DNA from: Octopus sinensis
Taxonomy: Eukaryota
Direction of reading: 5' to 3'
Assembly (NCBI RefSeq): GCF_006345805.1
Contig: NC_043002.1
Location: 14,260,001-14,324,000, forward strand
DNA: 64,000 nucleotides
Under the pieces are notes generated by a model, which was given only the letters and a program-made list of their open reading frames with translations, had not been told where the DNA came from and ran no database searches. A program made the position numbers and the translations under genes. Shown in pieces: positions 1,690-55,150 of this stretch. How positions within the stretch are numbered: the stretch's first letter is position 1; the number at the start of each line of letters is the position of its first letter.

Positions 1690-1857
1690 CGGTATCCCAC
1701 AGAAGCTGCTCCGCCTCATACAAGGCTACTACCGATCGACTCGAGCACGCGTCAGGGTCTATGGTGAGCAGGCGTTCTCAACACCACGCTCCGGGACTAC
1801 CGGGGCGTAGAGGAGAGGAGTCGCGGTTACGGACCTGGTCTACGCGGACGACATCGT
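1690..1857 (+). mobile_element. RTE-type non-LTR retrotransposon RT fragment, left part
   Basis: Translates GIPQKLLRLIQGYYRSTRARVRVYGE...AVTDLVYADDIV; catalytic YADD at 1841-1852; stops at (TA)11. Confidence 0.8.
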
Positions 1858-1906
1858 ATATATATATATATATATATACGAGAAAGAAGCAACAAGAATG
1901 GATTAG

Positions 1907-1999
1907 TTTTTAGTACAATTGTTTCATACAAAGACAGGCTTTATTAAAAGTTGCAAATATTGCAGCAGATAAAGGTGTCCCGTACTCATCAGCTAAAAC
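1907..1999 (-). ncRNA. Mirror copy of the minimal Type I hammerhead
   Basis: Reverse complement of 2685-2777; one substitution at the distal end of helix I. Confidence 0.83.
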
Positions 2000-2684
2000 A
2001 CATATGAGTTCTCCAAACATCTAGTGGGTGAGGCTACACTCATGAAGTATTGGAGATAATTTCATTAAAAGCAGATTTAGGTTGTAAACAGACTTCCGAA
2101 GTTCTTTAATGATGATGCAGTCTCATCACAGGTTTTTAAAAAAAGCTTATTAGCTTCACAGAGTTGAATTAATCCGTAGTGTAGATGTAAAATTCCAGAT
2201 ATATGAGGAAGAATTTCATACTCACAGACGATGAATTTATCCATGGTTAATCCACAATGAGGTGGGTATAATTTCATGCTATATGATAAGGTATTTGTCA
2301 CATTACTGTTCTCTTCACAAGACTGCTATGTTATGATTAGGAAATCATAACATAGCAGTCTTGTGAAGAGAACAGTAATGTGACAAATACCTTATCATAT
2401 AGCATGAAATTATACCCACCTCATTGTGGATTAACCATGGATAAATTCATCGTCTGTGAGTATGAAATTCTTCCTCATATCTCTGGAATTTTACATCTAC
2501 ACTACGGATTAATTCAACTCTGTGAAGCTAATAAGCTTTTTTTAAAAACCTGTGATGAGACTGTGCATCATCATTAAAGAACTTCGGAAGTCTGTTTACA
2601 ACCTAAATCTGCTTTTAATGAAATTATCTCCAATACTTCATGAGTGTAGCCTCACCCACTAAGATGTTTGGAGAACTCATATGT

Positions 2685-2777
2685 GTTTTAGCTGATGAGT
2701 ACGGGACACCTTTATCTGCTGCAATATTTGCAACTTTTAATAAAGCCTGTCTTTGTATGAAACAATTGTACTAAAAC
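2685..2777 (+). ncRNA. Minimal Type I hammerhead ribozyme with extended helix II
   Basis: Helix I GTTTTAG/CTAAAAC; CTGATGA 2692-2698; helix II GTACGG-GACA...TGTC-T-TTGTAT extended by CTTTAT/ATAAAG and TGCAA/TTGCA; GAAA 2759-2762; helix III C[AATT]G; GUA triplet, predicted cut after 2770. Confidence 0.85.
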
Positions 2778-2942
2778 CTAATCCATTCTTGTTGCTTCTT
2801 TCTCGTTTATAATCACTCCACATTACTGTACGGTTAACACCATATAGTTCTCTGGTGCATCTAAGTTAAGTACCGCATTCAAGTAACTTCATTAGAATTG
2901 ACTTGAATCTTAATTGCTTTTATTTTATATATATATATATAT

Positions 2943-3637
2943 GGAAGCAGGGAGGATGTTCAAGGGGCTCTCGAAGGGGTTCAAATGGCAGCAGCCGCGG
3001 TTGGTCTCCGAATCACTGCCGCCAAGTCGAAGGTGATGAGGGCGTTGGTTCCGACTGACTTCTGGCAGCCAATATCTCTCGCGGGCGAGGAACTGGAGGA
3101 TGTGGAGTCTTTTGTCTACTTGGGCTCAACGGTGATCCCAAACGGTCAGGGTGCAGCTGAGGTCGATCATCGCATCAATGCTGCTCGATCTGCCTTTGGA
3201 CGCCTAAAGCGGTGTCTGTGGGACTGAAGGGAGATCTCATTGGTGACCAAAGGGCGACTATATCAGTACTTCTCTATGGCTGTGAAACGTTGCCTATGCT
3301 GGTGGTCGATCAACGGAGGCTGGAAGTCTTCGACAATGACTGCCTCCGGTGCATTCTTCGCTGCCGTCGGGTGGATCGAGTTTCCGCCGCCAATCTGCGA
3401 CTTCGCCTGTCTCTGAGGCCCCTTCCATCTGTCCTTCTGCAACGGTGCTTGCGGTGGTTTGGCCATGCATGTAGGCGTCCGATGTGTGAATTGAGCCGTG
3501 ATTTCCTTCTCCCACCTCCACTTCCCAACTGGCGGAAATGCGCGGGCGGGCAGCTGAAGACCTGGGTTACGACGATCAAGGAGGACCTCACTGTGCTCAC
3601 GGGACCGCAGGTGGTCGGCCTGCGCCGATGGAACCGT
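2943..3637 (+). mobile_element. RTE-type RT fragment, right part (continues directly after YADDIV)
   Basis: GSREDVQGALEGVQMAAAAVGLRITAAKSKVM...VESFVYLGS...INAARSAFGRL...LLYGCET...RWFGH: post-YADD RT region of RTE-clade LINEs, with stops and frameshifts. Confidence 0.85.
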
Positions 3638-4117
3638 ACACATATAAAAACATGTACGTATATATATATATATATTTATAGGTGTACGTGTATATGAAGG
3701 ATAATGGGTGTACGTATGTGTTTGTGTGCGTGTCGCCGCCCTTGGCCATTTTGCACATACATGACAACACCTCTCTCTCTGTCTCTCTTAGTGAATCATT
3801 CAAACTCACTAGAAAAAATGCGAGAAAAAGTACATAAATAAAAAAGAATTATGCTATCACTCTCTCCCTTTCTCTCTCTCATACAGCGCAAGACATACCT
3901 TTTCTCTCTCTCTTTCTTTCTCTCTCTCTCTGACAACTCACCTCTATTTCTCTCTCAGTCAAACGCACACTAAAAATGATGCGAGAAAAAGTAATTAAAA
4001 TTTACGCTATCAATCTCTCTGACAACACACGCACCTCTCTCTCTCACTCAATCACTCATACAATCACTAAAAAAAGATGCGGAAAAATATGAAAAAGATG
4101 TACGTTGTCATTCTCTT

Positions 4118-4153
<36 letters not shown>

Positions 4154-5827
4154 ACATACACACACACACACATACACACTCATAACACACACACAACAAC
4201 AACACACACCATCTCTTTCTCTCTCACACACACTCAGCACACACTTTAAAGTTATCATTCAAGTTTCAATAAGGTAAAATCTTAAATTAGTAATTGACAC
4301 ATTATCTATTAGTATAATAGCAGAGCCTGAAAAAAAAAACGTGAATTACATTAAAAAATGCAAGCAAGAGAGATAAAATTCTTAAGGTTATACACCTGGA
4401 AAAGTACATGACAGGTTATTTTCCACGTGTAATAGCTTGTGCTGTACTTTTCCAGGTTTAAAATCCTAAGAATATTATTTCTCTCGCTCGCATTTTTCCA
4501 TGTAATAAATACATCGCTATTAAATATATTTGCTCCTTTACTTTCTGTAAAGTAATGCTATACGTTCAAATCTGTATCTTGTTCAGAATTCATAATAAGT
4601 TATTTGCTCCAAACTATCGAGTCATAATATTCTGATCCAAAACTATTTCAAGGCGAGGAAGACTGAACTATAGAATTCAATTAAATCTAGATGATAAAAT
4701 AAAGGAAATAAAGCAGTACCAGTCATTAAAAGTTTTAAGAGTAGGTGAAAGGGATAGGAATAATCACAAAAAGAAAGGAGTGAATTAGAAAATGCTACAA
4801 AAGAAAAACACGATTAATATTAAAAGTGATCTTAATGCTTAGAATAATGACTGAGTTATCGCATTGATATGATACACTATTACTTTAACATAGTGAATTG
4901 GGAGTTAATTGAATTGAAGAGCTTAAATAGAATAATTGCAAGACAGAGACATTGAACTAAATCCACAGTATTAAAGCCGATATTGCTAACATGTGCCTGC
5001 GCTGCGCGAAATTCATGCTGGTGACTAATAAAGAACTATTGGAAAGAAATATTAGTGTGAATAGAAAAATCCCAAGAAGCAAGAAAAGCGTAATAGATTA
5101 ACATGATAGAAACAAAATATAAAAAATATACACATTCAATTTATATAAAAATAACAATATATTGCAACTTTGAACACGTGGTTGAACATGCACAAAAGCT
5201 GTAAAATGACAGAAAATGCGAGAATCATATAAACAGTAAAAACAAAAAAACTAAGGTATCTTCACATCACAATCGCGATGTTATATGAACAAAATAAAAA
5301 TGAGAAAAATCCTCCATGGCGAATAACATGCAAAACTCGACAGGAGGGAACAAAAGAGAATGAAGGTCACAAATTTAGAGCTGTTACTGAAATAAAAATA
5401 CAAAAATAGATCTAATTTTTGCTGTATTGAGCCAATCGCTAGAGAGAAAGCCCTAAGAATATAGTGAAATGAGGCGTCCAAATCAATTGCAGAATCTGCC
5501 ATCTATACAAAGATTCTATAAAATGATGTAACTGGCCACACCAGTTCTTCCTGTGCAGTCAATGAAAAACCAGAGTATATCCAGGAGTATAATTGTGTTA
5601 ACAGCCCCGACCATTGGTTATAAATCTGATTATATGGTTTGAAATCTGAAATAGGACTTTAGCATCCATTGAAAAGCTGTATTCTAGTGCTCTAACTATA
5701 GCAGGGGATGTCAAGCTTATCCTGACTAAAAATGCTTTTGCCGAACTATTTCAATAAAGTTGTAATTACTGGAGGTGGGGGAGCGGGGAAATGCCTGTAC
5801 CTTTGCCAAAATCGTAATATATATATA

Positions 5828-6393
5828 TTGGGTTGTCCGGAAAGTTCATGCCGATTTTTAAAGGAAAGAAAAAGGTCAATAAATATTTGCCATTACAGTT
5901 TTAATCAACCAAATATGAACCATTCTGTTGCACAATGCGGCTCCATTTTTCCTTTAACATCAAAATACCCTCTTCCCAGAATTGTGGTGGTCCCATGGCA
6001 AAGAATTCTTCAAGGTATCTTTTTACGTCATCCAAGGAATTTAAATTTTTACCATTAAGACTATTCTGCAGAAACCTGAATAAGTGGAAATCCAAAGGAG
6101 CAATATCTGGTGAATATGGAGGGTGGGGTAACACATCCCAGCCGAGCTGCAGTAATTTTTGTCTGGTTCCTAAAGCATCGAGTGTCGAAATTGAACTTTC
6201 TTATCTTTCATTTTAAAGGGTTACAGAAATTACAAAGGTTATAGGAACGTAAACCTTCTTCCACGAAAAGATAGTTTAAACTTTGCTCTAAATGGAGGTG
6301 TAGTCAAATCTTATTTTTTGGACTCAATCATGTTCTAAAATAAGTCGAAATGTAAGCTACTATAAATCGGCACGAACTTGCCGGACAACCCAA
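5828..6393 (-). mobile_element. Internally deleted mariner element
   Basis: TIR TTGGGTTGTCCGGAAAGTTC at 5828 with its inverted copy ending 6393; TA on the left; minus-strand LPHPPYSPDIAPLDFHLF (mariner YSPDL motif). Confidence 0.9.
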
Positions 6394-11519: not shown

Positions 11520-12373
11520 CAAACAAACATACATACATAAACATACGGACTTCTACTTGGTGGTACTTCATTACTGTCAAGTAACCGCAAACCACCACGC
11601 GGTTAGAAACATATATCCTATATTGCTCAGCATCACGAAAAATTATCCTGCTGTTGGTTGTAAAACTTGTATTTATAAATATGCTTCCTGATAAGACATA
11701 ACACATTAAGTAATATAAAGACGTCTTTATTTACATAAGAGATTTATTCATACATTCGTTTCTCTTAAGAATACGAAACTAAATGGTGAAACGCAAATAC
11801 TTATACGACAACGTACTGAGTTTGTGAAATATACTGATGCATTTTCGTCTAGATCAGTACTTTTGAGTCTAAGAATAATATAAGGAAATTGGAAAGCTAT
11901 CAAATTATGTCTGGTAAAGTTGGGACAGTATGCTGAATAAAATATGCTAAGAAAATATGTTTATAATGGTAGAATCACGACATAGACGGGATAGGAAAAA
12001 ACGAAAAAAAAAAAAAAAAAAACAGACTCTAAAAAATGTTTGAAGTGTTGTATATTTACTATCTACTGAAAACATTTGAATCTCATATCCTGCTCCTGAA
12101 ACGGCATTAATATCCGATCGGATATATCCATTACTGTGAGCATATCGTTAATGAACAAAATACACCAAAGTTATTTTAGAACTAAATCTTAAACACATGC
12201 ATGCGTTCATATTTACACATAGTGAATTTCATATATATATATATATATCTATAACAATTTAGGAATGGCCTAAACAGGCCATTCGTCCACCAGAAAGAGC
12301 AGCCAGAACTCCAACCGCCAAGTAGTGTAATTCGGAAATAAGGTGAAAATTTAAAAACATTTACCCTAATTCA

Positions 12374-12474
12374 TCTTTTATACGATGCATCGTTTCAGTG
12401 TCTTTAATGATAGACCAGCTTAATTAAATTAAATTAAGCTAGTCTACCATAGGTCACACTTCATCAGTAAAAGA
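12374..12474 (-). ncRNA. Type I hammerhead ribozyme, array copy L1
   Basis: Minus strand TCTTTTA-CTGATGA-AGTGT[extension]ACACT-GAAA-CGA[TGCA]TCG-TA-TAAAAGA. Confidence 0.92.
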
Positions 12475-12845
12475 AACCTGGGAGAGACGGACATACACGA
12501 GGCGACTGTATCAATGCCTCGGGAATGTCTGTCTTAAAATTTTCAAGACCAACGCATTCGCGCCAAACTTATCGGCAGCAAATATAAACTGCCGATTCCA
12601 TCTCAGATTAGTCAGAAAATTATCAATTAATCAATTTAGGGTAGCAAAAAATTCAGTAAAAATTATCGTTACCAGCGGCCTAGTGGAAAAGAGAAAATAG
12701 TCAAAGACTAAATATGTATAAATATAACAATTTAGGAATGGCCTAAACAGGCCATTCGTCCACCAGAAAGAGCAGCCAGAACTCCACCGCCAAGTAGTGT
12801 AATTCGGAAATAAGGTGAAAATTTAAAAACATTTACCCTAATTCA

Positions 12846-12945
12846 TCTTTTATACGATGCATCGTTTCAGTGTCTTTAATGATAGACCAGCTTAATAAAT
12901 TAAATTAAGCTAGTCTACCATAGGTCACACTTCATCAGTAAAAGA
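12846..12945 (-). ncRNA. Type I hammerhead, copy L2
   Basis: As L1; 1-nt deletion near the distal helix II loop. Confidence 0.9.
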
Positions 12946-13319
12946 AACCTGGGAGAGACGGACATACACGAGGCGACTGTATCAATGCCTCGGGAATGTC
13001 TGTCTTAAAATTTTCAAGACCAACGCATTCGCGCCAAACCTATCGGCAGCAAATATAAACTGCCGATTCCATCTCAGAATTAGTCAGAAAATTATCAATT
13101 AATCAATTTAGGGTAGCAAAAAATTCAGTAAAAATTTATCGTTACCAGCGGCCTAGTGGAAAAGAGAAAATAGTCAAAGACTAAATATGTATAAATATAA
13201 CAATTTAGGAATGGCCTAAACAGGCCATTCGTCCACCAGAAAGAGCAGCCAGAACTCCAACCGCCAAGTAGTGTAATTCGGAAATAAGGTGAAAATTTAA
13301 AAACATTTACCCTAATTCA

Positions 13320-13420
13320 TCTTTTATACGATGCATCGTTTCAGTGTCTTTAATGATAGACCAGCTTAATTAAATTAAATTAAGCTAGTCTACCATAGGT
13401 CACACTTCATCAGTAAAAGA
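13320..13420 (-). ncRNA. Type I hammerhead, copy L3
   Basis: Identical to L1. Confidence 0.92.
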
Positions 13421-13793
13421 AACCTGGGAGAGACGGACATACACGAGGCGACTGTATCAATGCCTCGGGAATGTCTGTCTTAAAATTTTCAAGACCAACG
13501 CATTCGCGCCAAACTTATCGGCAGCAAATATAAACTGCCGATTCCATCTCAGAATTAGTCAGAAAATTATCAATTAATCAATTTAGGGTAGCAAAAAATT
13601 CAGTAAAAATTTATCGTTACCAGCGCCTAGTGGAAAAGAGAAAATAGTCAAAGACTAAATATGTATAAATATAACAATTTAGGAATGGCCTAAACAGGCC
13701 ATTCGTCCACCAGAAAGAGCAGCCAGAACTCCAACCGCCAAGTAGTGTAATTCGGAAATAAGGTGAAAATTTAAAAACATTTACCCTAATTCA

Positions 13794-13893
13794 TCTTTTA
13801 TACGATGCATCGTTTCAGTGTCTTTAATGATAGACCAGCTTAATTAAATTAAATTAAGCTAGTCTACCATAGGTCACACTCATCAGTAAAAGA
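13794..13893 (-). ncRNA. Type I hammerhead, copy L4
   Basis: As L1 but one A missing at the core/helix II junction (possible consensus error). Confidence 0.8.
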
Positions 13894-14264
13894 ACCTGGG
13901 AGAGACGGACATACACGAGGCGACTGTATCAATGCCTCGGAATGTCTGTCTTAAAATTTTCAAGACCAACGCATTCGCGCCAACTTATCGGCAGCAAATA
14001 TAAACTGCCGATTCCATCTCAGAATTAGTCAGAAAATTATCAATTAATCAATTTAGGGTAGCAAAAAATTCAGTAAAAATTTATCGTTACCAGCGGCCTA
14101 GTGGAAAAGAGAAAATAGTCAAAGACTAAATATGTATAAATATAACAATTTAGGAATGGCCTAAACAGGCCATTCGTCCACCAGAAAGAGCAGCCAGAAC
14201 TCCAACCGCCAAGTAGTGTAATTCGGAAATAAGGTGAAAATTTAAAAACATTTACCCTAATTCA

Positions 14265-14365
14265 TCTTTTATACGATGCATCGTTTCAGTGTCTTTAATG
14301 ATAGACCAGCTTAATTAAATTAAATTAAGCTAGTCTACCATAGGTCACACTTCATCAGTAAAAGA
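14265..14365 (-). ncRNA. Type I hammerhead, copy L5
   Basis: Identical to L1. Confidence 0.92.
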
Positions 14366-14480
14366 AACCTGGGAGAGACGGACATACACGAGGCGCTGTA
14401 TCAATGCCTCGGGAATGTCTGTCTTAAAATTCCCGAGGCATTGATACAGTCGCCTCGTGTATGTCCGTCTCTCCCAGGTT

Positions 14481-14580
14481 TCTTTTACTGATGAAGTGTG
14501 ACCTATGGTAGACTAGCTTAATTTAATTTAATTAAGCTGGTCTATCATTAAAGACCTGAAACGATGCATCGTATAAAAGA
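14481..14580 (+). ncRNA. Type I hammerhead, copy R1
   Basis: CTGATGA at 14488; 1-nt deletion in helix II (GACCT vs GACACT); predicted cut after 14573. Confidence 0.82.
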
Positions 14581-14950
14581 TGAATTAGGGTAAATGTTTT
14601 TAAATTTTCACCTTATTTCCGAATTACACTACTTGGCGGTTGGAGTTCTGGCTGCTCTTTCTGGTGGACGAATGGCTGTTTAGGCCATTCCTAATTGTTA
14701 TATTATACATATTTAGTCTTTGACTATTTTCTCTTTTCCACTAGGCCGCTGGTAACGATAAATTTTTACTGAATTTTTTGCTACCCTAATTGATTAATTG
14801 ATAATTTTCTGACTAATTCTGAGATGGAATCGGCAGTTTATATTTGCTGCCGATAAGTTTGGCGCGAATGCGTTGGTCTTGAAAATTTTAAGACAGACAT
14901 TCCCGAGGCATTGATACAGTCGCCTCGTGTATGTCCGTCTCTCCCAGGTT

Positions 14951-15051
14951 TCTTTTACTGATGAAGTGTGACCTATGGTAGACTAGCTTAATTTAATTTA
15001 ATTAAGCTGGTCTATCATTAAAGACACTGAAACGATGCATCGTATAAAAGA
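14951..15051 (+). ncRNA. Type I hammerhead, copy R2
   Basis: All core residues and three helices intact; predicted cut after 15044. Confidence 0.93.
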
Positions 15052-15425
15052 TGAATTAGGGTAAATGTTTTTAAATTTTCACCTTATTTCCGAATTACAC
15101 TACTTGGCGGTTGGAGTTCTGGCTGCTCTTTCTGGTGGACGAATGGCCTGTTTAGGCCATTCCTAAATTGTTATATTTATACATATTTAGTCTTTGACTA
15201 TTTTCTCTTTTCCACTAGGCCGCTGGTAACGATAAATTTTTACTGAATTTTTTGCTACCCTAAATTGATTAATTGATAATTTTCTGACTAATTCTGAGAT
15301 GGAATCGGCAGTTTATATTTGCTGCCGATAAGTTTGGCGCGAATGCGTTGGTCTTGAAAATTTTAAGACAGACATTCCCGAGGCATTGATACAGTCGCCT
15401 CGTGTATGTCCGTCTCTCCCAGGTT

Positions 15426-15526
15426 TCTTTTACTGATGAAGTGTGACCTATGGTAGACTAGCTTAATTTAATTTAATTAAGCTGGTCTATCATTAAAGAC
15501 ACTGAAACGATGCATCGTATAAAAGA
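15426..15526 (+). ncRNA. Type I hammerhead, copy R3
   Basis: Intact; predicted cut after 15519, 475 nt from the R2 site. Confidence 0.93.
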
Positions 15527-15899
15527 TGAATTAGGGTAAATGTTTTTAAATTTTCACCTTATTTCCGAATTACACTACTTGGCGGTGGAGTTCTGGCTGC
15601 TCTTTCTGGTGGACGAATGGCCTGTTTAGGCCATTCCTAAATTGTTATATTTATACATATTTAGTCTTTGACTATTTTCTCTTTTCCACTAGGCCGCTGG
15701 TAACGATAAATTTTTACTGAATTTTTTGCTACCCTAAATTGATTAATTGATAATTTTCTGACTAATTCTGAGATGGAATCGGCAGTTTATATTTGCTGCC
15801 GATAAGTTTGGCGCGAATGCGTTGGTCTTGAAAATTTTAAGACAGACATTCCCGAGGCATTGATACAGTCGCCTCGTGTATGTCCGTCTCTCCCAGGTT

Positions 15900-16000
15900 T
15901 CTTTTACTGATGAAGTGTGACCTATGGTAGACTAGCTTAATTTAATTTAATTAAGCTGGTCTATCATTAAAGACACTGAAACGATGCATCGTATAAAAGA
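15900..16000 (+). ncRNA. Type I hammerhead, copy R4
   Basis: Intact; predicted cut after 15993. Confidence 0.93.
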
Positions 16001-16217
16001 TGAATTAGGGTAAATGTTTTTAAATTTTCACCTTATTTCCGAATTACACTACTTGGCGGTTGGAGTTCTGGCTGCTCTTTCTGGTGGACGAATGGCCTGT
16101 TTAGGCCATTCCTAAATTGTTATATTTATACATATTTAGTCTTTGACTATTTTCTCTTTTCCACTAGGCGCTGGTAACGATAAATTTTCTGAATTTTTTG
16201 CTACCCTAAATTGATTA

Positions 16218-16248
<31 letters not shown>

Positions 16249-16344
16249 AATATATATATATATATAGACATACACACACGCACATATATATATATTCGTT
16301 TATGAATATATATATATAGAAAAGCACACACATGTATATATATT

Positions 16345-16574: not shown

Positions 16575-16729
16575 ATACACACACACACACACAAACACAC
16601 AAACACACATACACATATATATACTTGGACAGATCAGTAAGTATTGAGACTGTTGCCATAGTAGCGAAGCTAAAGCCAGTAGAGTGAAGCTGCTTGGTGC
16701 AGATTGACCTTCAGTTCTGCTTTGCATGC

Positions 16730-17497
16730 ACAGTGAGGTTCAGCGCTCTAGGTCACCGACGCCGTGCTTGGAAGGAGCGTTTGTAGCGTGTGATCGTCGC
16801 ATTGAACATGACAGAGAAACATGCGCTGAGAATCTGCATCAACCTTTGCCAAAAGCTTGGTGATACCTAATCAGAGGCCTATGCAAAATTTTCAAAAAGC
16901 TTTCGTCCTAGTCGACAGAATGAAGACGATTTTGTGCGACTGAAACTCGAGTGTCTTTAGATCAGCTGAAGGCGGTTTTGGCACTAACTTAGCAGACACG
17001 CGTCTCATACCCAAATCTTTATAGTGATAATGGACAAAACTGAACCGTAACTGATTTGCACATCTGATAACTCACGGTTGTTATTCTACGATTTTCCTTC
17101 ACAGCTGCACCCACATCTGTGAGGTTTTTCTCAGTTCTGCTGGTTGCGGGTCTCTCAGAACGTTTGTCACTTTCGACCATTTTCGGCCATCTTAGAAACG
17201 TCTGAACTTCTCTTACACTTGTGAGCGTCTCAACACTGATCACCATACACTTTGTACAAGTTTGAGTAAGACTTTGAGCAGGTATGACAACTTACTCTCG
17301 TGCTGAATGCGACCATCCCACATTACACACGTTACATTGAAGCACTTCTGTAAACGATGGAAGTGAGCTAGAATTTTCAAAATTTAGTGCACATTAACTC
17401 CTGAAGTCAAGGTCAATCTGTGCCAAGCAGCTTCACTTCGTGATTTAGCTTTGTTGGAATGGATAAGTCCGGATACTTCTCGATCAAACCTTGTATA
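16730..17497. mobile_element. Decayed, rearranged mariner-like transposase N-terminal fragments ending in a TIR
   Basis: Plus 16808: MTEKHALRICINLCQKLGDT; minus 17019-17246: FLRWPKMVESDKRSERPATSRTEKNLTDVGAAVKENRRIT (HTH-like region); TIR-like end TCCGGATACTTCTCGATCAAACCTTGTATA. Confidence 0.6.
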
Positions 17498-17499
17498 TT

Positions 17500-17761
<262 letters not shown>

Positions 17762-18426
17762 AATATACAAGGTTTGATCGAGAAGTATCCGGACTTATCC
17801 ATTGCACTGAGGATAGTTAAAATATTTTTTATTAAAATATTAAAGCTGTAACCGGTTTCACAGTTAAACACTGAATTTTCGAAAAGGTCAAATAGAAAGA
17901 CGTAGCTTATGTCGTAGTTGTCTTGCTTCTGATTAGTGTTTGAAAATAGCCCTACATTTATAGGGAGTTCTTAGCTCAAATTAGCATATGTTTTGGATAA
18001 GTTATGACTGGTAGCCGATAAGCACAGGACTGGTCTTAGAAATCTTTGTAGGTTCCCCGCAACGCCCATGTGCTACTGTCAAGTGACAATGTTTGGCGAC
18101 ACAATTTCAGACTGACACGATTGACTGTACATGTCCAAACAATGAATGCTCTGAATGTTCTCTGTTAAGTGTTTGTAGAGAATGAACAAATGTTTAAGTT
18201 TAGAAGCTTTTGTACGTTTCCTGCTACCTGACAGTATATTTTGAGCCTAAAAAGAAGGCAGACAGAGTTGACGTAATATGTTTAGTTTTAATCAAGGCAT
18301 TCCAAATTTAATGTCTGGTGGGAAAGTGGACAAGAATCATTTGTTATAGTTCAGTGATTAAAGTTTAGGTTGTTAGCTGATAACAACCTAAAGATAAGTG
18401 ACAGAATGAGATCTGTGTGTGAACAG

Positions 18427-19720
18427 TTATTTGTGTATATACTCTATTAAAGTCTTCGTTTGTACTGTTGTATGAAAGTGTTGTATGAAAGCGTTTATCC
18501 ATGCTTCATCTCTGGTATTCGCCGAACACAGGTAGATTGGGGAAGACCTGAAATTTGGAGGATTTGATTGTTGCACATATTTTTTGCACATATGCAATGG
18601 AATCTGTGTAGCACTGGGGTTTCGTATTTGTTGTCGGGTAATAGTCTGTAATTTTCTTCGAGTAAGTTTTGTTTGACCTATGTAATCTTCAGTGCATCCT
18701 TGAGATTTGATAGTCCATATTAAATCCCTCAAAGAACATATAAAGTGATTTTTTAAAGGTAAAAATCTGTCCAGATTTGAATTTGCATATTGTGTCTTCA
18801 ATAAAGTTGATGCAGGTTCCGCAATTGTGGCGGCGACACTTTTTGACCGCTGGTGTAGGAATTGTGGTATGTAATTTATCACTTGTTAGGAATTTTCTGA
18901 GAGACTTTGATTATCTTTTCATTTTGATTATTTTGTGTATTTAAAATGTCTGTTTCATTCTTGGGTCTTGTTTTAGTAATGGGATGTTTTGATGAATAAT
19001 ATTGTAAAGCTCTGCATTCTTGAGTTGTGTGTTGTAATAAAAGGTAGAGTATTGGATGTATCTGGAGCGTTCCTTGTAAGATATTTATAGCTTTGCACAT
19101 TCTACTCCGTTGTTTATTAGCATTAATGGATATTATCTTTTAAGTAGTACTTCTTTAATTCCTGGAGTCTTTGATTGCAAGTTTCAGGTTCAAGCCAAAA
19201 TTCTTCTTGCTAGATGAAAAGGGATATTATTCTTCGTGTATTTGGGATGGCATGAGCAGAACAGTGGGTATCTTTTAAAATCTGTATGTGTGTTATGAAT
19301 ATCTGTTTCAATGAATATTTTATCTCTTTTGATAGTTTGTATATTTAGGAATAGTAGTTGATTTCTACTGTATTCCATGGTAAAGTCAATATTATTGTTT
19401 ATGAAGTTGATTTTTGAAATCTATACGTTGTTCAAATGTGTACGTGCGTAGGATTAGGCAGTTATCTAAGTAACGTTTCCAGTTTTCTAGTAGATATTTG
19501 TGGAGGTTCAAGCCATGTATTAATTTAGAATATTCATATATTTTGACCTGTATGTATGCCATGACTATATTGGTGTAAGTCGGAGCAACTTTTGTCACCA
19601 TCGCAGTTCCACACAGCTATTTATGCATGTTAAATCTAAAATATATTTGTAGTTTTCATTGATAAGATGTATATCTCCATCTGTTTGTTCTAGTTCTTTA
19701 AGCAACGTAATTCACGAGTA
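18427..19720 (-). mobile_element. Decayed Penelope-like retroelement (RT + GIY-YIG endonuclease)
   Basis: GTAMVTKVAPTYTNIVM; WKRYLDN (RYxDD decayed); FLNIQ; IETDIHNTHTDFKRYPLFCSCHPKYTKNNIPFHLARRI (PLE-type C-terminal RT motif); TIKSQGCTEDYIGQT (GIY-YIG). Multiple stops and frameshifts. Confidence 0.85.
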
Positions 19721-27137: not shown

Positions 27138-29806
27138 TTGGATACAGCAATGAACCCTAATAAATTAGCTAACGTACGAAGATACATTCTCAACACAAAA
27201 AAAATATCAGAAATAGAAATAGAACACCTAAAAGAAAACATACACCAGGAAAATGTAGATAGAAGCCACACAACAATGCCCAATAATATAAACACTGAAA
27301 CTGTAAAACACGAAGACAAGCGCAACATTCCCAACAAACACGATGTAAACAACGAAGGGGAGCCTAATGATTATGATAATATAAAAAATAAAATAATCAA
27401 AGAACTGAAAACCACAGAGCTCAAAATGGACCACCGACCATACCTCCCAAGAATCAAAATAAACGAAATAACAATACCTATTATAGACAGCATAAACCTA
27501 GCCGTCACTGAAAAAAGTGATATCACTGAGCTAAATAACCTAATATACGCAGCAGCCACTGCAGCCACAAAGGAAGCTGGATACTCACCCAAACCCGCCC
27601 AAACAGGAGTACCACCACCCAAACAAACCCTGTGGATAAATAACATCCAAAGAAAAATAAAAAAAAATAGAAAAGACCTGTCGATTCTTAATGAAATCAG
27701 CAAACAATCAACGCTACTGAGCAACAAAAAGAGAACAAAAATACTCCGCAAATATAACATCACAGAGAAAGATTTGCCTGAAATAAAAGAAAAGCTGAAG
27801 CAAGATATCCTTGCCAAAGCACAAAGGATCTGCCGGTACAAGAAACGCCAACGCTTCTTTGAAGAAAACAAAAAGTTCAACTCCAACCCCAAAAAGTTCT
27901 ACCAAGAACTGGGCAAAAATAAAATAGAAGTCACTGCAGCACCAACGGCAGAAGAATTGGAAGAATTCTGGAGAGAAATATGGTCGGCGAACGAACCACC
28001 AAAAAAAAGGAGTATCAAAATAACAAACTCGGCATCTGAACAACTTTGGACCCCCATAACAACTGAAGAGGTCACCCAGGCACTGCAAAGACTAAGCAAC
28101 TGGAAGGCACCTGGGCATGACAAGATCCCCAACTTCTGGTTGAAATATCTAACAGGAATGCACAAAAAGCTGGCTGAAAACTTTAACAGCATACTAGCAG
28201 AGCCAGAGACAATGCCTGAATGGCTCACGAAGGGGAAAACCATCTTAATTCCCAAATCAAATGAAACAGAAAAACCAGAAAACTACAGACCAATAACCTG
28301 CCTCCCTACTATGTTCAAGGCATTTACTGCAGTGATATCACAAAGGCAGAACAAGCACCTGGACGAAAATAAACTGTTCCCAGAAGAGCAGAAAGGATGC
28401 CGCAAAGGCTCATATGGCTGTAAAGATCAACTAATGATTAATAAAGCCATAACTGAAGACAGCCACAGAAAGAAGAAAGGCCTCAGTATGGCCTGGATTG
28501 ACTACAAAAAGGCGTTTGATAGCACCCCCCACACGTGGATCCTCGAAACACTAGCCATTAACAAAGTAGCACCAACAATCATAAAATTCATAGAGCACTC
28601 TATGAATAAATGGCAAACAGTCCTACACCTCCAAACAAAAGAGGGACTCATGAAAACCAAAGACATCCCCATTAGAAGAGGAATATTCCAGGGAGACACG
28701 CTCTCTCCACTCCTTTTCTGCTTGGCACTGTCACCTCTATCTGATATGCTAAATAGAACTGGATACGGATATAAATGTTACGGCAAAACGATCAGCCACC
28801 TTTTATATATGGATGACCTAAAACTATACGCTGCAAATGACAAACAGCTGAAACACTATTAAAGACAGTTCATGGATTTACCAAAGAAATAGATATGAAA
28901 TTTGGATTAGAAAAATGCGCCAAAGTAACCATGAAAAAAGGAAAACTAGTTAAGAGTAACAACATCACACTAGATAAAACCAATGAAATAAAAGAATTAG
29001 ACCAAAGCCAAACTTACAAATACTTAGGAATCCATGAACTAGATAAGACACAACACAGACAAATGAAAGAGAAAATAAAAAAAGAATATTATAGACGAGT
29101 TAGATCAATACTAAACACAGAGCTCAATGCTAAAAACAAGATAATAGGTATCAACACTTTAGCCGTCCCAGTTATAAGTTACAGCTACAATATCCTCAAC
29201 TGGACACGAAATGAACTGACCAAAATAGATAGGAAAACAAGAAAAATAATGACAGGATCTAGGATGCATCACCCAAAATCTGACATAGAAAGACTATATA
29301 TACAACGTATAGAAGGTGGTAGAGGCCTTATACACCTGGAAATCTACTATAAAATAACCACCATAGGACTGCAAAAATATCTACTTCAGAAGGAAGGAAA
29401 ACTGATCCAGATAGCGGCAAAACACGAGCAAAACAAAAAACTGTTCTCAGTATTTAAGGAAGCTGACAAATGCAAACAAGAAATCATACCACCTAATAAA
29501 CATGAAGAAGAAGAAGAAGATGAAGAAACAACAAAAGCTATAAAACAAATGAAATCCAAACTAAAAATAGAACAGCAACGAACCATGATAAAACGATGGC
29601 ATGAAAAGCCCCTTCATGGTAAATACTGGACTAAACTAAACGCAAAAGAAATAGACAAAGAAAAATCCCAGCAATGGTTGAGAAGCTCAGGACTCAAAGC
29701 AGAAACAGAGATATTTTTAATTGCAGCACAAGGCCAAAGCCTCCCTACCAGAAATTACCAAAAACATGTAATGAAAAGAAATATGGAGATGGACAAGAAA
29801 CAATAA
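27138..29806 (+). pseudogene. RT ORF of the R4/Dong-like element, frameshifted near 28850
   Basis: A 1-nt loss after YMDDLKLYAANDKQL joins the 574-aa and 303-aa ORFs; the zinc-knuckle CxxC appears deleted near 29775. Confidence 0.85.
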
Positions 29807-39975: not shown

Positions 39976-41680
39976 AACTAATTGATTTCAGTGTGTGTAT
40001 ACATATTCTGTCAACATTAAAAAATTGAACGTCGGCTTTTGAGGATATTCTAGTAATCCTGAAAATGCTCTTACCATCCCTCAATGAATTTATCCCTGCA
40101 ACAAAGAAATTTTAGTCGGCGTAGAAAGATCTTTGAACACAATTATACTTGTAAAATTTCAATGCGCAAATTTTTCCGCCGCATAACTTTTTTAATACCT
40201 AATCATTAGTATGTATACTGAGTTTAGGTCTGGTCTACTCGTGACAAACGCAGTGTCTGAAAAGCTATAGAAACGGGCGTAATTATGTCTCAGTAAGAGA
40301 GTTTAATGAACGTGGAGGCATTGCTGTCTGAAAGGAATAATTACAAATTATGGGTTCATAATCATTGAAAATTTTGCAATAATTCAACATGTATTAAATT
40401 TGATATCAGGGGGAGTCAGGACGACTTTCTTCAAAAATAAAAATATATATAACAGTATCGAAAGATATTCAAGCATTTATATCTCGTTAAAATTCAGTGA
40501 AACTAAACAGGGATAATATCTGCTATTAATATCTTGAACTGAATTTATAGTTCAACCTTTTGGCTAAATATTGATTCCCTAACGAATACTCATTCTTTGA
40601 AAAACAATAATGAGCTTATTGTGTATAGTACTCAAGTGCATTATAACTCGTAGGTAAGGTTGAAAGAGGGAAAGTTGCTAGAATTAAAGTATACAAGAAC
40701 GGCAATGAATGATAGTAATGCCTGGACAATAGACAGAATAAAACACAAAAGTCACAAATGTGAATATTTAAAGAACCATACGGAAGACAGTATGAATAGG
40801 CACATCATCACTGGTTTTGGTGAATTTCCGGATATATGGAACTTTTGAAGGTTGAAGTGTCTTCATAGCTAACAACATATTCCACTAGTTCTTCCATTTT
40901 TTCACAATTCTGAAAAGTATTCTTAAGTGTATACTACGTCTCCAAAATAAAAGAAAGAAAAATATAATTAATTACTATTATAATATAAGAAGCTTTACGT
41001 ACACGCACGAAAACATATTTTTAAAAGTCACACCAAATAACTTATACGATGGCCACAAACTGAACAAATGTCAAAATTTATAATTGTTTAACCTCAATAT
41101 GCTATTAGTGCAAATGTACTAGTGACCAACTTAAGAAAACTAAATATATTATGATTAATATTATATATAGTATCGATAGTAGTTCGACTTAATTTTAATA
41201 ACATTAGGAAAACTAGACAATATCAGGTGATGTGTATCTGCATATTTGGAAATGAAACATTATTCCACTGTCTCTGATCAATACAACTACGGCATAAGCA
41301 GTAGCCTTAAAAATATTTAAAACACTGGGAATAAATTACTGAATAGAGCTAACACTTAACTAATACAAAATATTTTAGATTTTCTTTCGGCAAAACGACC
41401 AATAATCACATCCTCCGCACCGGCATTTTCAAATTGAAGGTTACTAAACATCCATCAGACAAACCATCGGCCACAGTTACTACTTTCTCTTCTCTGTCTG
41501 TCTCTCTCTCTCTCTGTCACATGTGTGAGTATACATGTGTACGTATGTGTATATGTATGCGTATAAACGCATACATGTGTTTGAAAATGTAGTAAATACA
41601 TACATACACACACACACACATACACCCACATATATATGCTAATATGACACTGTGTGTAGGTGTAATAACTATATATATTC

Positions 41681-41721
<41 letters not shown>

Positions 41722-42370
41722 CACGCACACACACACACACGCACACATATATATGTACGGCGGTATTCTTTCGGTTTCACTCTACCAAATTCACTCACAA
41801 GACTTTGGTCGGCCCGAGGTTATAGTAGAAGACACTTGCTCAAGGTGCCACACAGTGGGACTGAGCCCGGAACCATAAATTTGCGAAGCAACCTTCTTAC
41901 CACACAGCCACTGTTGCGCCTACATACCTTTTTTATACATGTATATATGTATGCGTGTGCGTGCGTATGTACATATATTTCTGTGCATGTATATGCATGT
42001 ATTGTGTGTCTCTTTATGTGTATGTATATACGTCTGCACGTATGCAAGCACATGCAGGTATGTCTATGGAACGTCTCTACACGTCAGCGTCTGAATTCCT
42101 TTCTCGCTCGCATCACCATTTTCTTCTTTGTGTTTCTCAATATACTGAAAATCATTTAGTTTTTTACTATGATATATGTACGTATGTGTGTATGTGTGTG
42201 TGTGTGCATGTGTGTGTGTGTATTGCAACGATGGAGATTTTTTCTTTTTAGGAACTAGCTCCTGCTTCAGAAAACGAATTTAAATAATCGAAAACAGAAC
42301 AGAAACATACACACTTACAGAGTGTATATACACATACATGTATACACCTACAGCTGCATAAAGGTATAAA

Positions 42371-42597
42371 GCTGGCAGAAACGTGAGCACGCCGGGCGAA
42401 ATGCTTAACAGTATTTCGTCTGCCACTACGTTCCGAGTTCAAATTCCGCCGAGGTCGACTTTGCCTTTCATCCTTTCGGTGTCGATTAAATAAGTACCAG
42501 TTATGCACAGGGGTCGATATAATCGACTGAATCCGTTTGTCTGTCCTTGTCTGTCCTCTCTGTGTTTAGCCCCTTGTGGGTCGTAAAGAAATAGGTA
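42371..42597 (+). mobile_element. SINE family B (duplicated at 44471-44700)
   Basis: GGCAGAAACG.GAGCACGCCGGGCGAAATGCTTA...GAGTTCAAATTCCGCCGAGGTCGACTTTGCC...AAAGAAATAGG. Confidence 0.8.
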
Positions 42598-43139: not shown

Positions 43140-43768
43140 TGTATGTACTCGTGTGCGAGAGCGAATAAAATAGAGCTCAGCACACGCACACACACAGACA
43201 TACACGCACACACACGTACACCCACTATCTCGTACATACATACATTGTACGTGTGTGTGTTTCCCTTTAACTCAAACATGGAAGCAATAGGCGCGTGTGT
43301 GCTTGAGTGTGTGTGCGCGCGAAAGAGTACGTACCACTCATTACCTCCCCCACTGACTTCAAAGCAAATGTTGGTTTTAGCAGGACATGAAAACGAAAGT
43401 AAATAAATAAAAATTCTTTACGGAAATTGCCGAACAATCAGATGGAAAAAAATGGCAAGTTCGAGACCTTGGTCGAAAGATCCCTACATCACAATGTATA
43501 ATGGTTTGTAATGAATATTTGTAGCGACACGGATGAATTAAATTTGCATGGGAACTCCATTAGGCATTAATATAGTGTAAAATGCATGTTAAATTATTTG
43601 AAAGAACTATGAATCATATTCAGGCCATACGAAAGGTATAAAATAACCGCGACCTACTTATGCTTTTATTCTCATTTTACCAAATTATATTTGGTAATCA
43701 AATATAATTGCGTAAATTTTGGTACCTTTTACAGATGTTACAAGGTGAAATTTCGGCTATATATTATG

Positions 43769-43829
<61 letters not shown>

Positions 43830-54488: not shown

Positions 54489-55150
54489 TGCTAAGGTGGC
54501 GAGCTGGGCGAAATGCTTAGCGGTATTTCGTCTGCCGCTAGATTCTGAGTTCAAATTCCGCCGAGAAAAAGGCGATGAACTGGCCGAAACGTTAGCACGC
54601 CGGGCGAAATGCTTAGCGGTATCTCGTATGCCGTTACGTTCTGATTTTATATTCCGCCGAGGTCGACTTTGCCTTTCATCCTTTCGGGGTCGATAAATTA
54701 AGTACCAGTTATGCACTGGGGTTGATATAATCGACTTAATCCGTCTGGCTGTTCATGTTTGTCTCCTCTGTTTTTAGCCCCTTATGGGTAGTAAAAAAAT
54801 AGGTATTTCGTCTGCGGCTACGTTCTGAGTTCAAATTCCGCCGAGGTCGACTTCGTCTTTCAGCCTTTCGGGGTCGATTAAATAAGTACCAGTTACTCAC
54901 TGGGGTCGATATAATCGACTTAATCCGTTTGTCTGTCCTTGTTTGTCCCCTCTGTGCGTAGCCCTTATGGGCAGTAAAGAAATAGGTATTTCGCCTGTCT
55001 TAACGCTCTGATTTCAAATTCCACAAAGGTCGAATTTGCCATTCATCATTTCGGTGTCTATAAATTATGTACCAGTTGCATACTGGGATTGATCTAATCG
55101 ATTGGCCCGCTCCCGCAAAATTTCGGGTCTTGTGCCTAGAGTAGAAATGA
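54489..55150 (+). mobile_element. SINE family B, multimodular tandem
   Basis: TTCTGAGTTCAAATTCCGCCGAG(GTCGAC) module recurs four times. Confidence 0.85.

What the first reader, a model, noticed from the sequence alone, without database searches (positions are those of the whole stretch)
12250..16219. Nine-hammerhead array: a ~475-nt retrozyme-like RNA fixed in the genome as a palindromic multimer
Seen: each non-coding unit has a complete Type I hammerhead: 7-bp helix I TCTTTTA/TAAAAGA, CUGAUGA, helix II AGUGU/ACACU with a long extension, GAAA, helix III CGA[UGCA]UCG, and a GUA triplet. Five copies are on minus, four on plus. Units are nearly identical, differing mostly by 1-nt deletions. Established: tandem Type I HHR repeats in animals (newt satellite 2, schistosome Sm-alpha, cricket pDo500, non-LTR retrozymes) are transcribed and self-cleave to monomers; circular forms are reported for retrozymes, and PLEs are the proposed mobilisers. 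Inference: a young cephalopod retrozyme-like family with a 475-nt monomer. I cannot confirm it is undescribed.
Basis: partly seen in the sequence, partly recalled or inferred. Interest (0 to 1): 0.95.

Follow-up and report, generated by a model that had tools for sequence, protein, structure and literature searches.

The report
Hammerhead-ribozyme retrozyme array, head-to-head
A 4-kb block of about eight nearly identical 475-base non-coding repeats, each with a complete self-cleaving hammerhead ribozyme motif, is a new example of a known kind of animal mobile element (a non-LTR retrozyme), and its shape suggests a Penelope-like retrotransposon inserted it.

Summary
Window 12251-16219 holds two inverted arms of a 475-nt non-coding unit (4.6 units with the ribozyme sense on the minus strand, 3.8 on the plus strand). 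They are joined 5'-to-5' at 14429-14431. There are nine type I hammerhead motifs. Seven fit a strict descriptor that found nothing in 300 simulated windows. The 475-nt monomer folds into all three hammerhead helices (z -7.4). Rfam and a covariance model trained on four validated retrozyme hammerheads both miss the motif. Rfam also missed a plain Penelope-like-element (PLE) hammerhead in a control, and the probable cause for the array is a roughly 54-nt extension of helix II. Thirteen of 14 differences between units are single-base homopolymer deletions, so the units are effectively identical and the array looks like one recent event. Both outer ends abut (TA)n. A second, unrelated hammerhead element at 1879-2925 has the same head-to-head, (TA)n-flanked shape. 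So does a full-length PLE from another assembly, apart from the inverted arm. A dead PLE lies 2.2 kb away. Best reading: a non-LTR retrozyme inserted PLE-style into a (TA)n microsatellite. It is a new member of a known kind. Cleavage, expression and copy number were not testable here.

The parts
12251..14431 (-). Left arm: 4.6 units of the 475-nt repeat with the ribozyme sense on the minus strand. Its 3' end (unit position 131, ...CCTAAATTGTTATA) lies at 12251, one base from the (TA)n tract 12231-12248/12249.
14429..16219 (+). Right arm: 3.8 units with the ribozyme sense on the plus strand. Its 3' end (unit position 229, ...CCTAAATTGATTAAT) lies at 16219 and runs directly into (TA)n from 16218.
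14410..14435 (.). 5'-to-5' junction of the two arms: CGGGAAT (14410-14416), a 12-nt spacer gtctgtcttaaa (14417-14428), then ATTCCCG (14429-14435). The 3 nt ATT (14429-14431) are shared by both arms (microhomology). The arm 5' ends are at unit positions 315 and 330.
15045..15519 (+). Reference monomer from one cleavage site to the next, 475 nt and identical to the consensus. Predicted cut sites (after GUA) are after 14573, 15044, 15519 and 15993 on the plus strand, and after 14272, 13801, 13327, 12853 and 12381 on the minus strand.
14951..15051 (+). Type I hammerhead, 101 nt. It comprises helix I UCUUUUA/UAAAAGA, the CUGAUGA core, helix II AGUGU/ACACU (5 bp) followed by a 5x5 internal loop and a 19-bp stem, GAAA, helix III ACGA[UGCA]UCGU, and cleavage after A17. 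Identical copies lie at 15426-15526 and 15900-16000.
14481..14579 (+). Hammerhead copy with a 2-nt deletion (AC) in the 3' strand of helix II. It fails the strict descriptor. The deletion may be real or a sequencing error.
14265..14365 (-). Hammerhead copy on the minus strand. Further minus-strand copies lie at 13320-13420 and 12374-12474 (identical), at 12846-12945 (1-nt deletion in the helix II loop, still passes the descriptor) and at 13794-13893 (1-nt deletion of the A after the core, fails the descriptor).
12231..12249 (.). (TA)n tract at the left outer end of the array.
16218..16266 (.). (TA)n tract at the right outer end of the array.
18427..19625 (-). Degenerate, 5'-truncated Penelope-like element, 2.2 kb from the array. 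It keeps reverse-transcriptase motifs (GTAM..AP.Y.N; RYLDN; FLN), a CX5CX2C linker and the GIY-YIG motif (DYIGQT), and is interrupted by stops and frameshifts. It is context rather than part of the array, and shows that PLEs live in this genome.

Best explanation
The block is a non-LTR retrozyme: a non-coding, non-autonomous retroelement whose 475-nt unit carries one type I hammerhead ribozyme.

Shown by the sequence:
- Nine hammerhead motifs have a complete catalytic core and three helices.
- The units are effectively identical.
- The two arms are joined 5'-to-5' with a 3-nt microhomology and a 12-nt spacer.
- Both outer (3') ends sit in one (TA)n microsatellite.

[quoted passage not shown] A host tRNA ligase circularises them. 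The circle, or an uncut multimer, is copied round and round by the reverse transcriptase of a Penelope-like element. The PLE's GIY-YIG endonuclease had nicked a (TA)n tract, and that nick provides the primer.

This would give, in a single event, a multimeric cDNA of identical units. The inverted second arm would arise either from priming at the second nick or from a fold-back template switch of the nascent cDNA. That is the same 'inverted 5'-truncated copy' structure described for PLE insertions. This particular locus is probably a recent insertion product. Whether it is also a transcribed master copy is unknown.
For: Hammerhead motif:
- The core and helices are present in nine copies.
- The strict descriptor found 0 hits in 300 simulated windows.
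- The minimum-free-energy fold of the linear monomer forms helices I, II and III exactly (-147 kcal/mol, z -7.4). The circular fold is -141.5 kcal/mol, z -7.4, 63% paired.
- A palindromic helix III also occurs in all four experimentally validated retrozyme hammerheads.

Retrozyme features:
- The array has no ORF of 40 aa or more and is 37% G+C.
- Unit length and copy number fall in the published ranges (51-972 bp; most families have at most 7 units).

Single recent event: 13 of 14 differences between units are homopolymer deletions, nearly all seen in one unit only, plus one substitution.

PLE-type insertion:
- PLE insertions are described as tandem/inverted, often with an inverted 5'-truncated copy, and (TA)n is a preferred target of the Naiad PLE clade, with a similar bias hypothesised for Neptune.
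- Both array ends abut (TA)n, which covers only 2.1% of the window.
- An unrelated hammerhead element at 1879-2925 has the same head-to-head palindrome (4-nt spacer) and (TA)n on both sides.
- A full-length PLE in locus L012, related to the window's PLE fragment, has a minimal hammerhead about 100 nt after its ORF and (TA)n on both sides.
- A PLE fragment lies 2.2 kb from the array (E 1.1e-88 to a relative that carries RVT_1; other relatives carry GIY-YIG).
- Both arm 3' ends fall 5-6 nt after the two copies of the unit's only 9-nt internal repeat, CCTAAATTG. This suggests sequence-guided priming.
Against: - No hammerhead family of Rfam matches, even at E up to 10. A covariance model built from four validated retrozyme hammerheads does not score the motif either.
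- The Rfam miss carries little weight, because Rfam also missed a plain PLE hammerhead and the second element's hammerhead. The likely cause for the array is the roughly 54-nt extension of helix II. Even so, no independent model confirms the motif.
- The 10.1-11.1 pair is A-U rather than the usual G-C.
- No second locus of the unit was found in the window, in IMG/VR or in JGI metagenomes. Mobility and family status are therefore unproven.
- Because the units are identical, there is no covariation evidence.
- The neighbouring PLE is dead and shows no sequence similarity to the unit.
- No target-site duplication can be read inside a microsatellite.
- The near-symmetry of the 5'-5' junction (unit positions 315 and 330) is not what two independent priming events would predict.
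Confidence: 0.72

Rival explanations
1. The tandem array is real, but the palindrome is an artefact of long-read sequencing or assembly, such as a fold-back chimeric read or a mis-joined repeat.
For: The deletion-only homopolymer noise (13 deletions, 0 insertions) points to a lightly polished long-read assembly. Tandem and inverted repeats are hard to assemble, and the PLE literature says so itself.
Against: - The two arms have different lengths and end at different unit positions (131 and 229).
- Each arm runs into different unique flanking sequence through a (TA)n tract.
- A second, unrelated hammerhead element in the same window has the same architecture. It is cleanly inserted into a LINE reading frame that continues on both sides (YADDIV | SREDVQ).
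- A chimeric read would not pick out hammerhead elements twice, nor place both ends in (TA)n.
Confidence: 0.07
2. The block is a satellite that grew at the DNA level by unequal crossing-over or replication slippage. A replication fold-back at a short inverted repeat then inverted it. The hammerhead is a passenger and no reverse transcription was involved.
For: The 5'-5' junction has a short spacer (12 nt) and a 3-nt microhomology, which is what replication fold-back inversions look like. The 2026 preprint discusses local amplification of retrozyme repeats by unequal crossover.
Against: - Units that differ by essentially nothing beyond probable read errors fit one-step synthesis better than stepwise growth.
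- A DNA fold-back would duplicate or lose flanking DNA. It would not leave both outer ends inside one (TA)n tract.
- The same architecture recurs in an unrelated, non-tandem hammerhead element.
- (TA)n flanks also bound a bona fide PLE.
Confidence: 0.12
3. The motif has the shape of a hammerhead but is catalytically dead or too slow to matter. In that case the repeat is an ordinary satellite or a relic.
For: - The 10.1-11.1 pair is A-U rather than G-C.
- Helix II is unusually long.
- In the minimum-free-energy folds of the 131-nt ribozyme region and of the circular monomer, the CUGAUG core pairs with CAUCG of helix III, which is an inactive conformer.
- No covariance model recognises the motif.
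- Two of the nine copies carry deletions in or next to the core.
Against: - All invariant core positions are intact in the other seven copies.
- The linear monomer folds into the active three-helix form.
- A validated axolotl retrozyme hammerhead cleaves with a U-U mismatch at the same 10.1-11.1 position.
- The 4-bp helix III capped by a tetraloop is more stable than in the amphibian ribozymes that need dimers.
Confidence: 0.1
4. The block is not an independent retrozyme but a run of terminal repeats (pLTRs) of an autonomous PLE whose coding part is absent from this locus.
For: Retrozymes and PLE pLTRs are reported to be phylogenetically intermingled. PLEs form partial tandems.
Against: - The PLE hammerheads described in the literature, and the one found here in L012, are minimal (helix II of 2 bp, helix III of 3 bp). 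This one has full-length helices.
- The unit shows no similarity to the window's PLE fragment or to the L012 PLE.
- 8.4 copies without any coding sequence matches the retrozyme definition.
Confidence: 0.12

Closest known systems
Metazoan non-LTR retrozymes (Cervera and de la Pena 2020, PMC7229834), for example the Mytilus galloprovincialis 350-390-bp repeats and the Acropora millepora 220-240-bp repeats
   Same: - Tandem non-coding repeats, each with one type I hammerhead.
- G+C below 50%.
- A strongly self-paired monomer.
- A palindromic helix III.
- Co-occurrence with PLEs in a mollusc-type genome.
   Different: - The unit is longer (475 nt against about 170-400 nt in that paper, though within the 51-972 bp of the 2026 preprint).
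- Helix II carries a 19-bp extension beyond an internal loop, instead of a small loop 2.
- The 10.1-11.1 pair is A-U.
- The array consists of two head-to-head arms. I did not find this arrangement described in the retrozyme papers I searched.
- Expression and circular RNA are not shown here.
Penelope-like elements, in particular the structure of their insertions (Craig et al. 2021, PMC8557442)
   Same: - Tandem plus inverted organisation with a 5'-to-5' junction.
- Insertion into (TA)n microsatellites.
- A type I hammerhead.
- A PLE relative with the same flanks was recovered here (L012).
   Different: - There is no reverse transcriptase or endonuclease ORF.
- The hammerhead is full-sized rather than the minimal PLE type.
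- The 30-40-bp 'tail' described for PLEs was not recognised. Instead one arm is 98 nt longer in unit coordinates.
Newt satellite 2 and axolotl retrozymes (HHR_Amex1 and HHR_Amex2)
   Same: [quoted passage not shown]
- GUA or GUC at the cleavage site.
- A palindromic helix III that would allow a double-hammerhead form between neighbouring units.
   Different: The amphibian helix III has 1-2 bp and needs dimers. Here it has 4 bp plus a tetraloop, so cleavage as a monomer is expected. There is no sequence similarity.
L1 twin-priming inversions (from my own knowledge: Ostertag and Kazazian 2001)
   Same: The two segments of the insertion sit head-to-head, each with its 3' end against target DNA, and are joined by microhomology.
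   Different: In L1 the two segments are different parts of one linear RNA. Here both arms carry the same repeated sequence and their 5' ends nearly coincide (unit positions 315 and 330). That fits a fold-back template switch, or a circular or multimeric template, better.

Membership tests
Hammerhead ribozyme, type I | Invariant core: C3 U4 G5 A6 N7 G8 A9, G12 A13 A14, the A15.1-U16.1 pair, and H17 at the cleavage site | tested here: met
   CUGAUGA, GAAA and GUA are present in all nine copies. One copy (13886, minus strand) lacks the A after the core.
Hammerhead ribozyme, type I | Three helices around the core, with helix I open and helices II and III closed | tested here: met
   The descriptor gives helix I 7 bp, helix II 5 bp and helix III 4-6 bp in seven of nine copies. 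The minimum-free-energy fold of the 475-nt monomer forms all three helices. The strict descriptor found 0 hits in 300 simulated windows.
Hammerhead ribozyme, type I | Recognition by a covariance model of the family (Rfam hammerhead families, or a model of validated retrozyme hammerheads) | tested here: inconclusive
   There was no Rfam match at gathering score or at E up to 10, and none with model R1. Rfam also missed the second element's hammerhead and a plain PLE hammerhead. R1 did find a canonical-size motif at 62245. The probable cause of the miss for the array is the roughly 54-nt insertion in helix II.
Hammerhead ribozyme, type I | Covariation that supports the helices | not testable with these tools
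   The units are identical and no relatives were found.
Hammerhead ribozyme, type I | Site-specific self-cleavage | not testable with these tools
   This needs in vitro transcription.
Non-LTR retrozyme | Tandem repeats of about 50-1000 bp, each carrying a type I hammerhead | tested here: met
   8.4 units of 475 bp carry nine hammerheads. The published ranges are given.
Non-LTR retrozyme | Non-coding, low G+C, and no LTR, PBS or PPT | tested here: met
   There is no ORF of 40 aa or more and G+C is 36.6%. The ends are plain truncations of the unit with no terminal repeats. PBS and PPT motifs were not searched for explicitly.
Non-LTR retrozyme | A highly self-paired monomer RNA | tested here: met
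   The z-score is -7.4 for both the linear and the circular fold, and 63% of bases are paired.
Non-LTR retrozyme | Dispersed copies in the genome (mobility) | not testable with these tools
   There is only one locus in the window. No eukaryotic genome can be searched by nucleotide sequence with these tools.
Non-LTR retrozyme | Expression as linear and circular monomer RNA | not testable with these tools
   No transcriptome data were available.
Non-LTR retrozyme | Co-occurrence with PLEs in the same genome | tested here: met
   A PLE fragment lies at 18427-19625 on the minus strand.
PLE-type insertion | Tandem copies with an inverted 5'-truncated copy (5'-to-5' junction) | tested here: met
.
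PLE-type insertion | Insertion into a microsatellite, (TA)n for some clades | tested here: met
   Both ends abut (TA)n. The same holds for the second element and for the L012 PLE.
PLE-type insertion | A 30-40-bp 'tail' extension at one end | tested here: inconclusive
   One arm extends 98 nt further in unit coordinates (positions 131 and 229). No separate tail sequence was recognised.

The most novel reading that the evidence does not exclude
The array may be a frozen record of how retrozymes integrate. In this reading, a single event combined rolling-circle reverse transcription of a 475-nt circular RNA by a PLE enzyme, priming from a nicked (TA)n tract at a specific RNA motif (CCUAAAUUG-N-UUA), and a fold-back template switch that made the second arm. 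This would be the first junction-level evidence that PLEs mobilise retrozymes, and it would explain the puzzling inverted copies of PLEs themselves. A read-through transcript of the locus would also be a hairpin with a stem of about 1.8 kb. Such a hairpin could feed small-RNA silencing or A-to-I editing directed against the family.
Probability: 0.3. Interest if true: 0.6.

Novelty: new member of a known kind. Interest (0 to 1): 0.42.

Why it matters
Non-LTR retrozymes and their link to PLEs are already described (2020 to 2026), so the existence of one more family is routine. I found no paper describing one in cephalopods.

The useful part is the anatomy of the insertion. The units are identical, the two arms are head-to-head, and both outer ends sit in (TA)n. 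An unrelated hammerhead element in the same window shows the same shape, and a full PLE elsewhere shows the same (TA)n flanks.

The published case for PLE mobilisation rests on co-occurrence and on similarity to pLTRs. Insertion junctions of this kind are direct mechanistic evidence, and they could be surveyed genome-wide at low cost.

There is also a practical lesson. Neither Rfam nor a model trained on validated retrozyme hammerheads detects hammerheads with a long helix II, so censuses based on those models will undercount them.

Tried and rejected
- **Rfam at gathering score and at E up to 10.** No hammerhead family matched. The many 'microRNA' matches (MIR814, MIR821 and others) sit exactly on the two palindrome centres and are artefacts of perfect hairpins.
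- **Covariance model R1 from four validated retrozyme hammerheads.** It did not score the array, but it found a different motif at 62245.
- **Exact-pattern scans of IMG/VR and JGI metagenomes for the ribozyme.** The metagenome scan gave ten hits, all chance matches in unrelated sequence with no CTGATGA upstream.
- **Identifying the source genome through the LINE ORF.** The best relative was only 44% identical and there was no exact record.
- **tRNA or Pol III-type origin of the unit.** ARAGORN found nothing. A box-A-like string on the antisense strand was not pursued.
- **Bacterial promoter and terminator scan.** It is irrelevant for an animal genome.
- **Similarity of the unit to the neighbouring PLE fragment, to the L012 PLE, to the O. 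bimaculoides locus and to the second element.** None was found. The resemblance between the tail of the second element and the L012 PLE tail is weak (z about 3.5, and some shuffles score as high).
- **Mirror test for a fold-back copy.** Differences between units are not mirrored between the arms. They are probably read errors, so the test says nothing.

Full report
**1. What is there**

Tandem Repeats Finder reports two adjoining arrays of one repeat. The first is 12239-14431 (period 471, 4.6 copies, 98% matches). The second is 14429-16219 (period 474, 3.8 copies, 99% matches). The two arrays are reverse complements of each other, with stretches of up to 688 nt at 100% complementarity.

I cut both arms at the predicted ribozyme cleavage site. 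This gave seven full units of 471-475 nt and four partial ones. The consensus is 475 nt. BLAST of the consensus against the window places the left arm at 12236/12251-14431 (ribozyme sense on the minus strand) and the right arm at 14429-16219 (sense on the plus strand). No other copy occurs in the 64 kb.

**2. The hammerhead**

Nine copies of CTGATGA...GAAA...GTA are present, four on the plus strand and five on the minus strand. Read as RNA, each copy has these parts:
- Helix I is UCUUUUA/UAAAAGA.
- The core strand is C3-A9 = CUGAUGA.
- Helix II is AGUGU/ACACU (5 bp), followed by a 5x5 internal loop (GACCU/UAAAG) and a 19-bp stem.
- G12-A14 is GAA.
- Helix III is ACGA[UGCA]UCGU, which includes the A15.1-U16.1 pair.
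- A17 is the cleavage nucleotide.

I wrote a descriptor that requires the core plus helix I of at least 6 bp, helix II of at least 5 bp and helix III of at least 4 bp. It finds seven of the nine copies. It also finds two copies of a different ribozyme elsewhere in the window. It found nothing in 300 simulated 64-kb sequences with the window's dinucleotide composition.

The two copies that fail carry small deletions. One has lost AC in the 3' strand of helix II (CTGATGA at 14488). The other has lost the A after the core (13886).

Folding gives independent support:
- The 131-nt region folds into helices I and II (-41.4 kcal/mol, z -5.4).
- The 475-nt monomer, taken from cut site to cut site (15045-15519), folds with all three hammerhead helices in its minimum-free-energy structure (-147 kcal/mol, z -7.4).
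- As a circle it reaches -141.5 kcal/mol, z -7.4, with 63% of bases paired.

**3. Why the covariance models are silent**

Rfam gives no hammerhead match at gathering score or at E up to 10. I took the four retrozyme hammerheads whose cleavage was shown experimentally (coral, mussel and two from axolotl; supplement of PMC7229834). I aligned them and built a covariance model. Run with filters off, that model does not score the array either.

The Rfam miss says little, because Rfam also misses the second element's hammerhead. It misses a textbook minimal PLE hammerhead too, the one found in locus L012. My model does find a canonical-size hammerhead-like motif at 62245-62289 (27.4 bits, E 8e-6). 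The common factor in the two missed window ribozymes is a long insertion in helix II, about 54 nt in the array. I infer that the insertion is the cause. The direct test, rerunning the models with the extension removed, could not be done with these tools.

**4. Age**

Among the seven full units there are 14 differences. Thirteen are single-base deletions inside homopolymer runs, nearly all seen in one unit only, and one is a substitution. Deletion-only homopolymer noise is the usual signature of lightly polished long-read assemblies. The true units are therefore probably identical. This fits synthesis of the whole array in one step better than slow satellite growth.

**5. The ends and the junction**

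In unit coordinates (position 1 is the first base after the cut), the left arm runs from 315 at the junction to 131 at its outer end. The right arm runs from 330 to 229.

The junction reads CGGGAAT-gtctgtcttaaa-ATTCCCG. The 3 nt ATT (14429-14431) are shared by both arms. The arms are thus joined 5'-to-5', and their 3' ends point outward.

Both outer ends run into (TA)n: 12231-12249 on the left and 16218-16266 on the right. Tracts of (TA) with at least six repeats cover only 2.1% of the window. Both outer ends also lie 5-6 nt after the two copies of the unit's only 9-nt internal repeat, CCTAAATTG.

**6. A second element with the same shape**

The descriptor also found a different type I hammerhead, with CTGATGA at 1992 on the minus strand and at 2692 on the plus strand. 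It has helix I GUUUUAG/CUAAAAC, a long helix II, and helix III ACAAUUGU.

It belongs to a near-perfect palindrome with its centre at 2340 and a 4-nt spacer. The arms are about 460 and 583 nt long and differ by two substitutions and two indels. (TA)n lies on both sides, at 1857-1878 and 2926-2942. The element interrupts a LINE reverse-transcriptase reading frame between YADDIV and SREDVQ.

Two unrelated hammerhead elements thus share a head-to-head palindrome and (TA)n flanks within one window. This argues against an assembly artefact and for a shared insertion mechanism.

**7. Penelope-like elements**

On the minus strand at 18427-19625 lies a broken, 5'-truncated PLE. It keeps reverse-transcriptase motifs, a CX5CX2C linker and a GIY-YIG motif. 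A conceptual translation, with X placed at the stops, finds relatives at E 1.1e-88. These include an Octopus bimaculoides protein (55% identity, E 1.9e-54) and proteins from Mytilus and Saccostrea. The relatives carry RVT_1, GIY-YIG and HTH_animal domains.

One relative sits in a full-length element in locus L012, from an ENA assembly. Its features are:
- ORFs at 2771-6332.
- A minimal hammerhead about 100 nt after the stop codon (attattgtcCTGATGAtataGAAAccggtc|gacagtaat).
- A 78-nt partial terminal repeat upstream.
- (TA)n on both sides.

The literature describes PLE insertions as partial tandems, often with an inverted 5'-truncated copy at the 5' end. It reports (TA)n as a preferred target of the Naiad clade, with a similar bias hypothesised for Neptune PLEs. 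The array matches that description point for point, except that it has no ORF.

**8. Mechanism**

The retrozyme life cycle is established. Repeats are transcribed and the hammerhead cuts out monomers. A tRNA ligase circularises the monomers. A primed circular RNA is then proposed to template tandem cDNA copies that integrate elsewhere, with PLEs as the suspected source of the enzymes.

The sequence here shows identical units, a (TA)n target, a 5'-5' junction with microhomology, and arm ends at a repeated motif. From this I infer a single PLE-type target-primed event on a circular or multimeric template.

How the second arm formed is not settled:
- The two arm ends lie at equivalent motif copies, which favours two priming events.
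- The near coincidence of the two 5' ends favours a fold-back template switch. The offset is 15 nt in a 475-nt unit for the array and 4 nt for the second element. I estimate the joint chance of this under independent ends at roughly 1 in 1000.

**9. Comparison and novelty**

All testable criteria for a non-LTR retrozyme are met. The differences from described members are:
- a longer unit than in the 2020 paper, though within the 51-972 bp of the 2026 preprint;
- an extended helix II;
- an A-U pair at positions 10.1-11.1;
- the head-to-head arrangement, which I did not find described in the retrozyme papers I searched.

I found no paper on hammerhead retrozymes in cephalopods. A cephalopod origin is plausible but not proven. 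The evidence is the octopus PLE relative and SINE-like repeats shared at 73-77% identity with an O. bimaculoides locus. The source genome is not in the searchable collections.

My verdict is a new member of a known kind. The anatomy of the insertion is the more interesting part of the finding.

Noticed in passing
window 1857-2942: A second, unrelated type I hammerhead element forms a near-perfect head-to-head palindrome (centre at 2340, 4-nt spacer). Its hammerheads lie at 1907-1999 on the minus strand and 2685-2777 on the plus strand. (TA)n flanks it on both sides, and it interrupts a LINE reverse-transcriptase frame between YADDIV and SREDVQ. A native (TA)n inside that coding stretch seems unlikely, so the tract may be made or expanded during insertion.
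   Followed up: partly
window 62245-62289 (+): A solitary, canonical-size type I hammerhead-like motif (CACACG CCGAUGA UGGGUCAAUACCCU GAAA CUCGAG UC CGUGUG). It was found by a model trained on validated retrozyme hammerheads (27.4 bits, E 8e-6). Core position 4 is C instead of U, so it may be inactive. There are no repeats around it.
   Followed up: partly
window 18427-19625 (-): A degenerate, 5'-truncated Penelope-like element (reverse-transcriptase motifs, CX5CX2C linker, GIY-YIG) with several stops and frameshifts. Its best named relative is from Octopus bimaculoides (55% identity). No hammerhead was recognised in its 3' region.
   Followed up: yes
L012 2598-6590 (ENA ERZ25069866, ctg3240): A full-length PLE related to the window's fragment. 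It has a minimal hammerhead about 100 nt after the ORF and a 78-nt partial terminal repeat that begins inside the hammerhead. (TA)n lies on both sides, 40 repeats at the 3' end.
   Followed up: partly
window 14337-14509 and 2198-2483: Strong sub-threshold Rfam 'microRNA precursor' matches (MIR814, MIR821, MIR4371 and others) sit exactly on the two palindrome centres. They reflect perfect hairpins, not microRNA genes.
   Followed up: yes
window 27138-29806 (+): A LINE-type reverse transcriptase in two ORFs (574 and 303 aa; RVT_1 at E 1.4e-22). The closest relatives in the protein collection are only 44% identical, and the named ones come from shrimp, insects and a sea urchin.
   Followed up: partly
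window 54618-55101; also about 49032-49178, 42372-42502 and 44475-44605: A SINE-like repeat, tandem at 54618-55101 (184-nt period, 2.6 copies). It is 75-77% identical to a stretch of an Octopus bimaculoides chromosome (L011 11611-11758).
   Followed up: no
window 41644-42159 and 43691-44266: Two ORFs share an identical C-terminal half, which indicates a local duplication with a spacing of about 2.05 kb.
   Followed up: no
window 17450-17810: Inverted arms of about 45 nt (ggataagtccggatacttctcgatcaaaccttgtata) flank a (CT)n/(TA)n microsatellite block, just downstream of the PLE fragment.
   Followed up: no
window 16700-17250 (-): An ORF fragment (…ERPATSRTEKNLTDVGAAVKENRRITT…) looks, from memory, like the N-terminal part of a mariner-type transposase. 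I did not test this.
   Followed up: no
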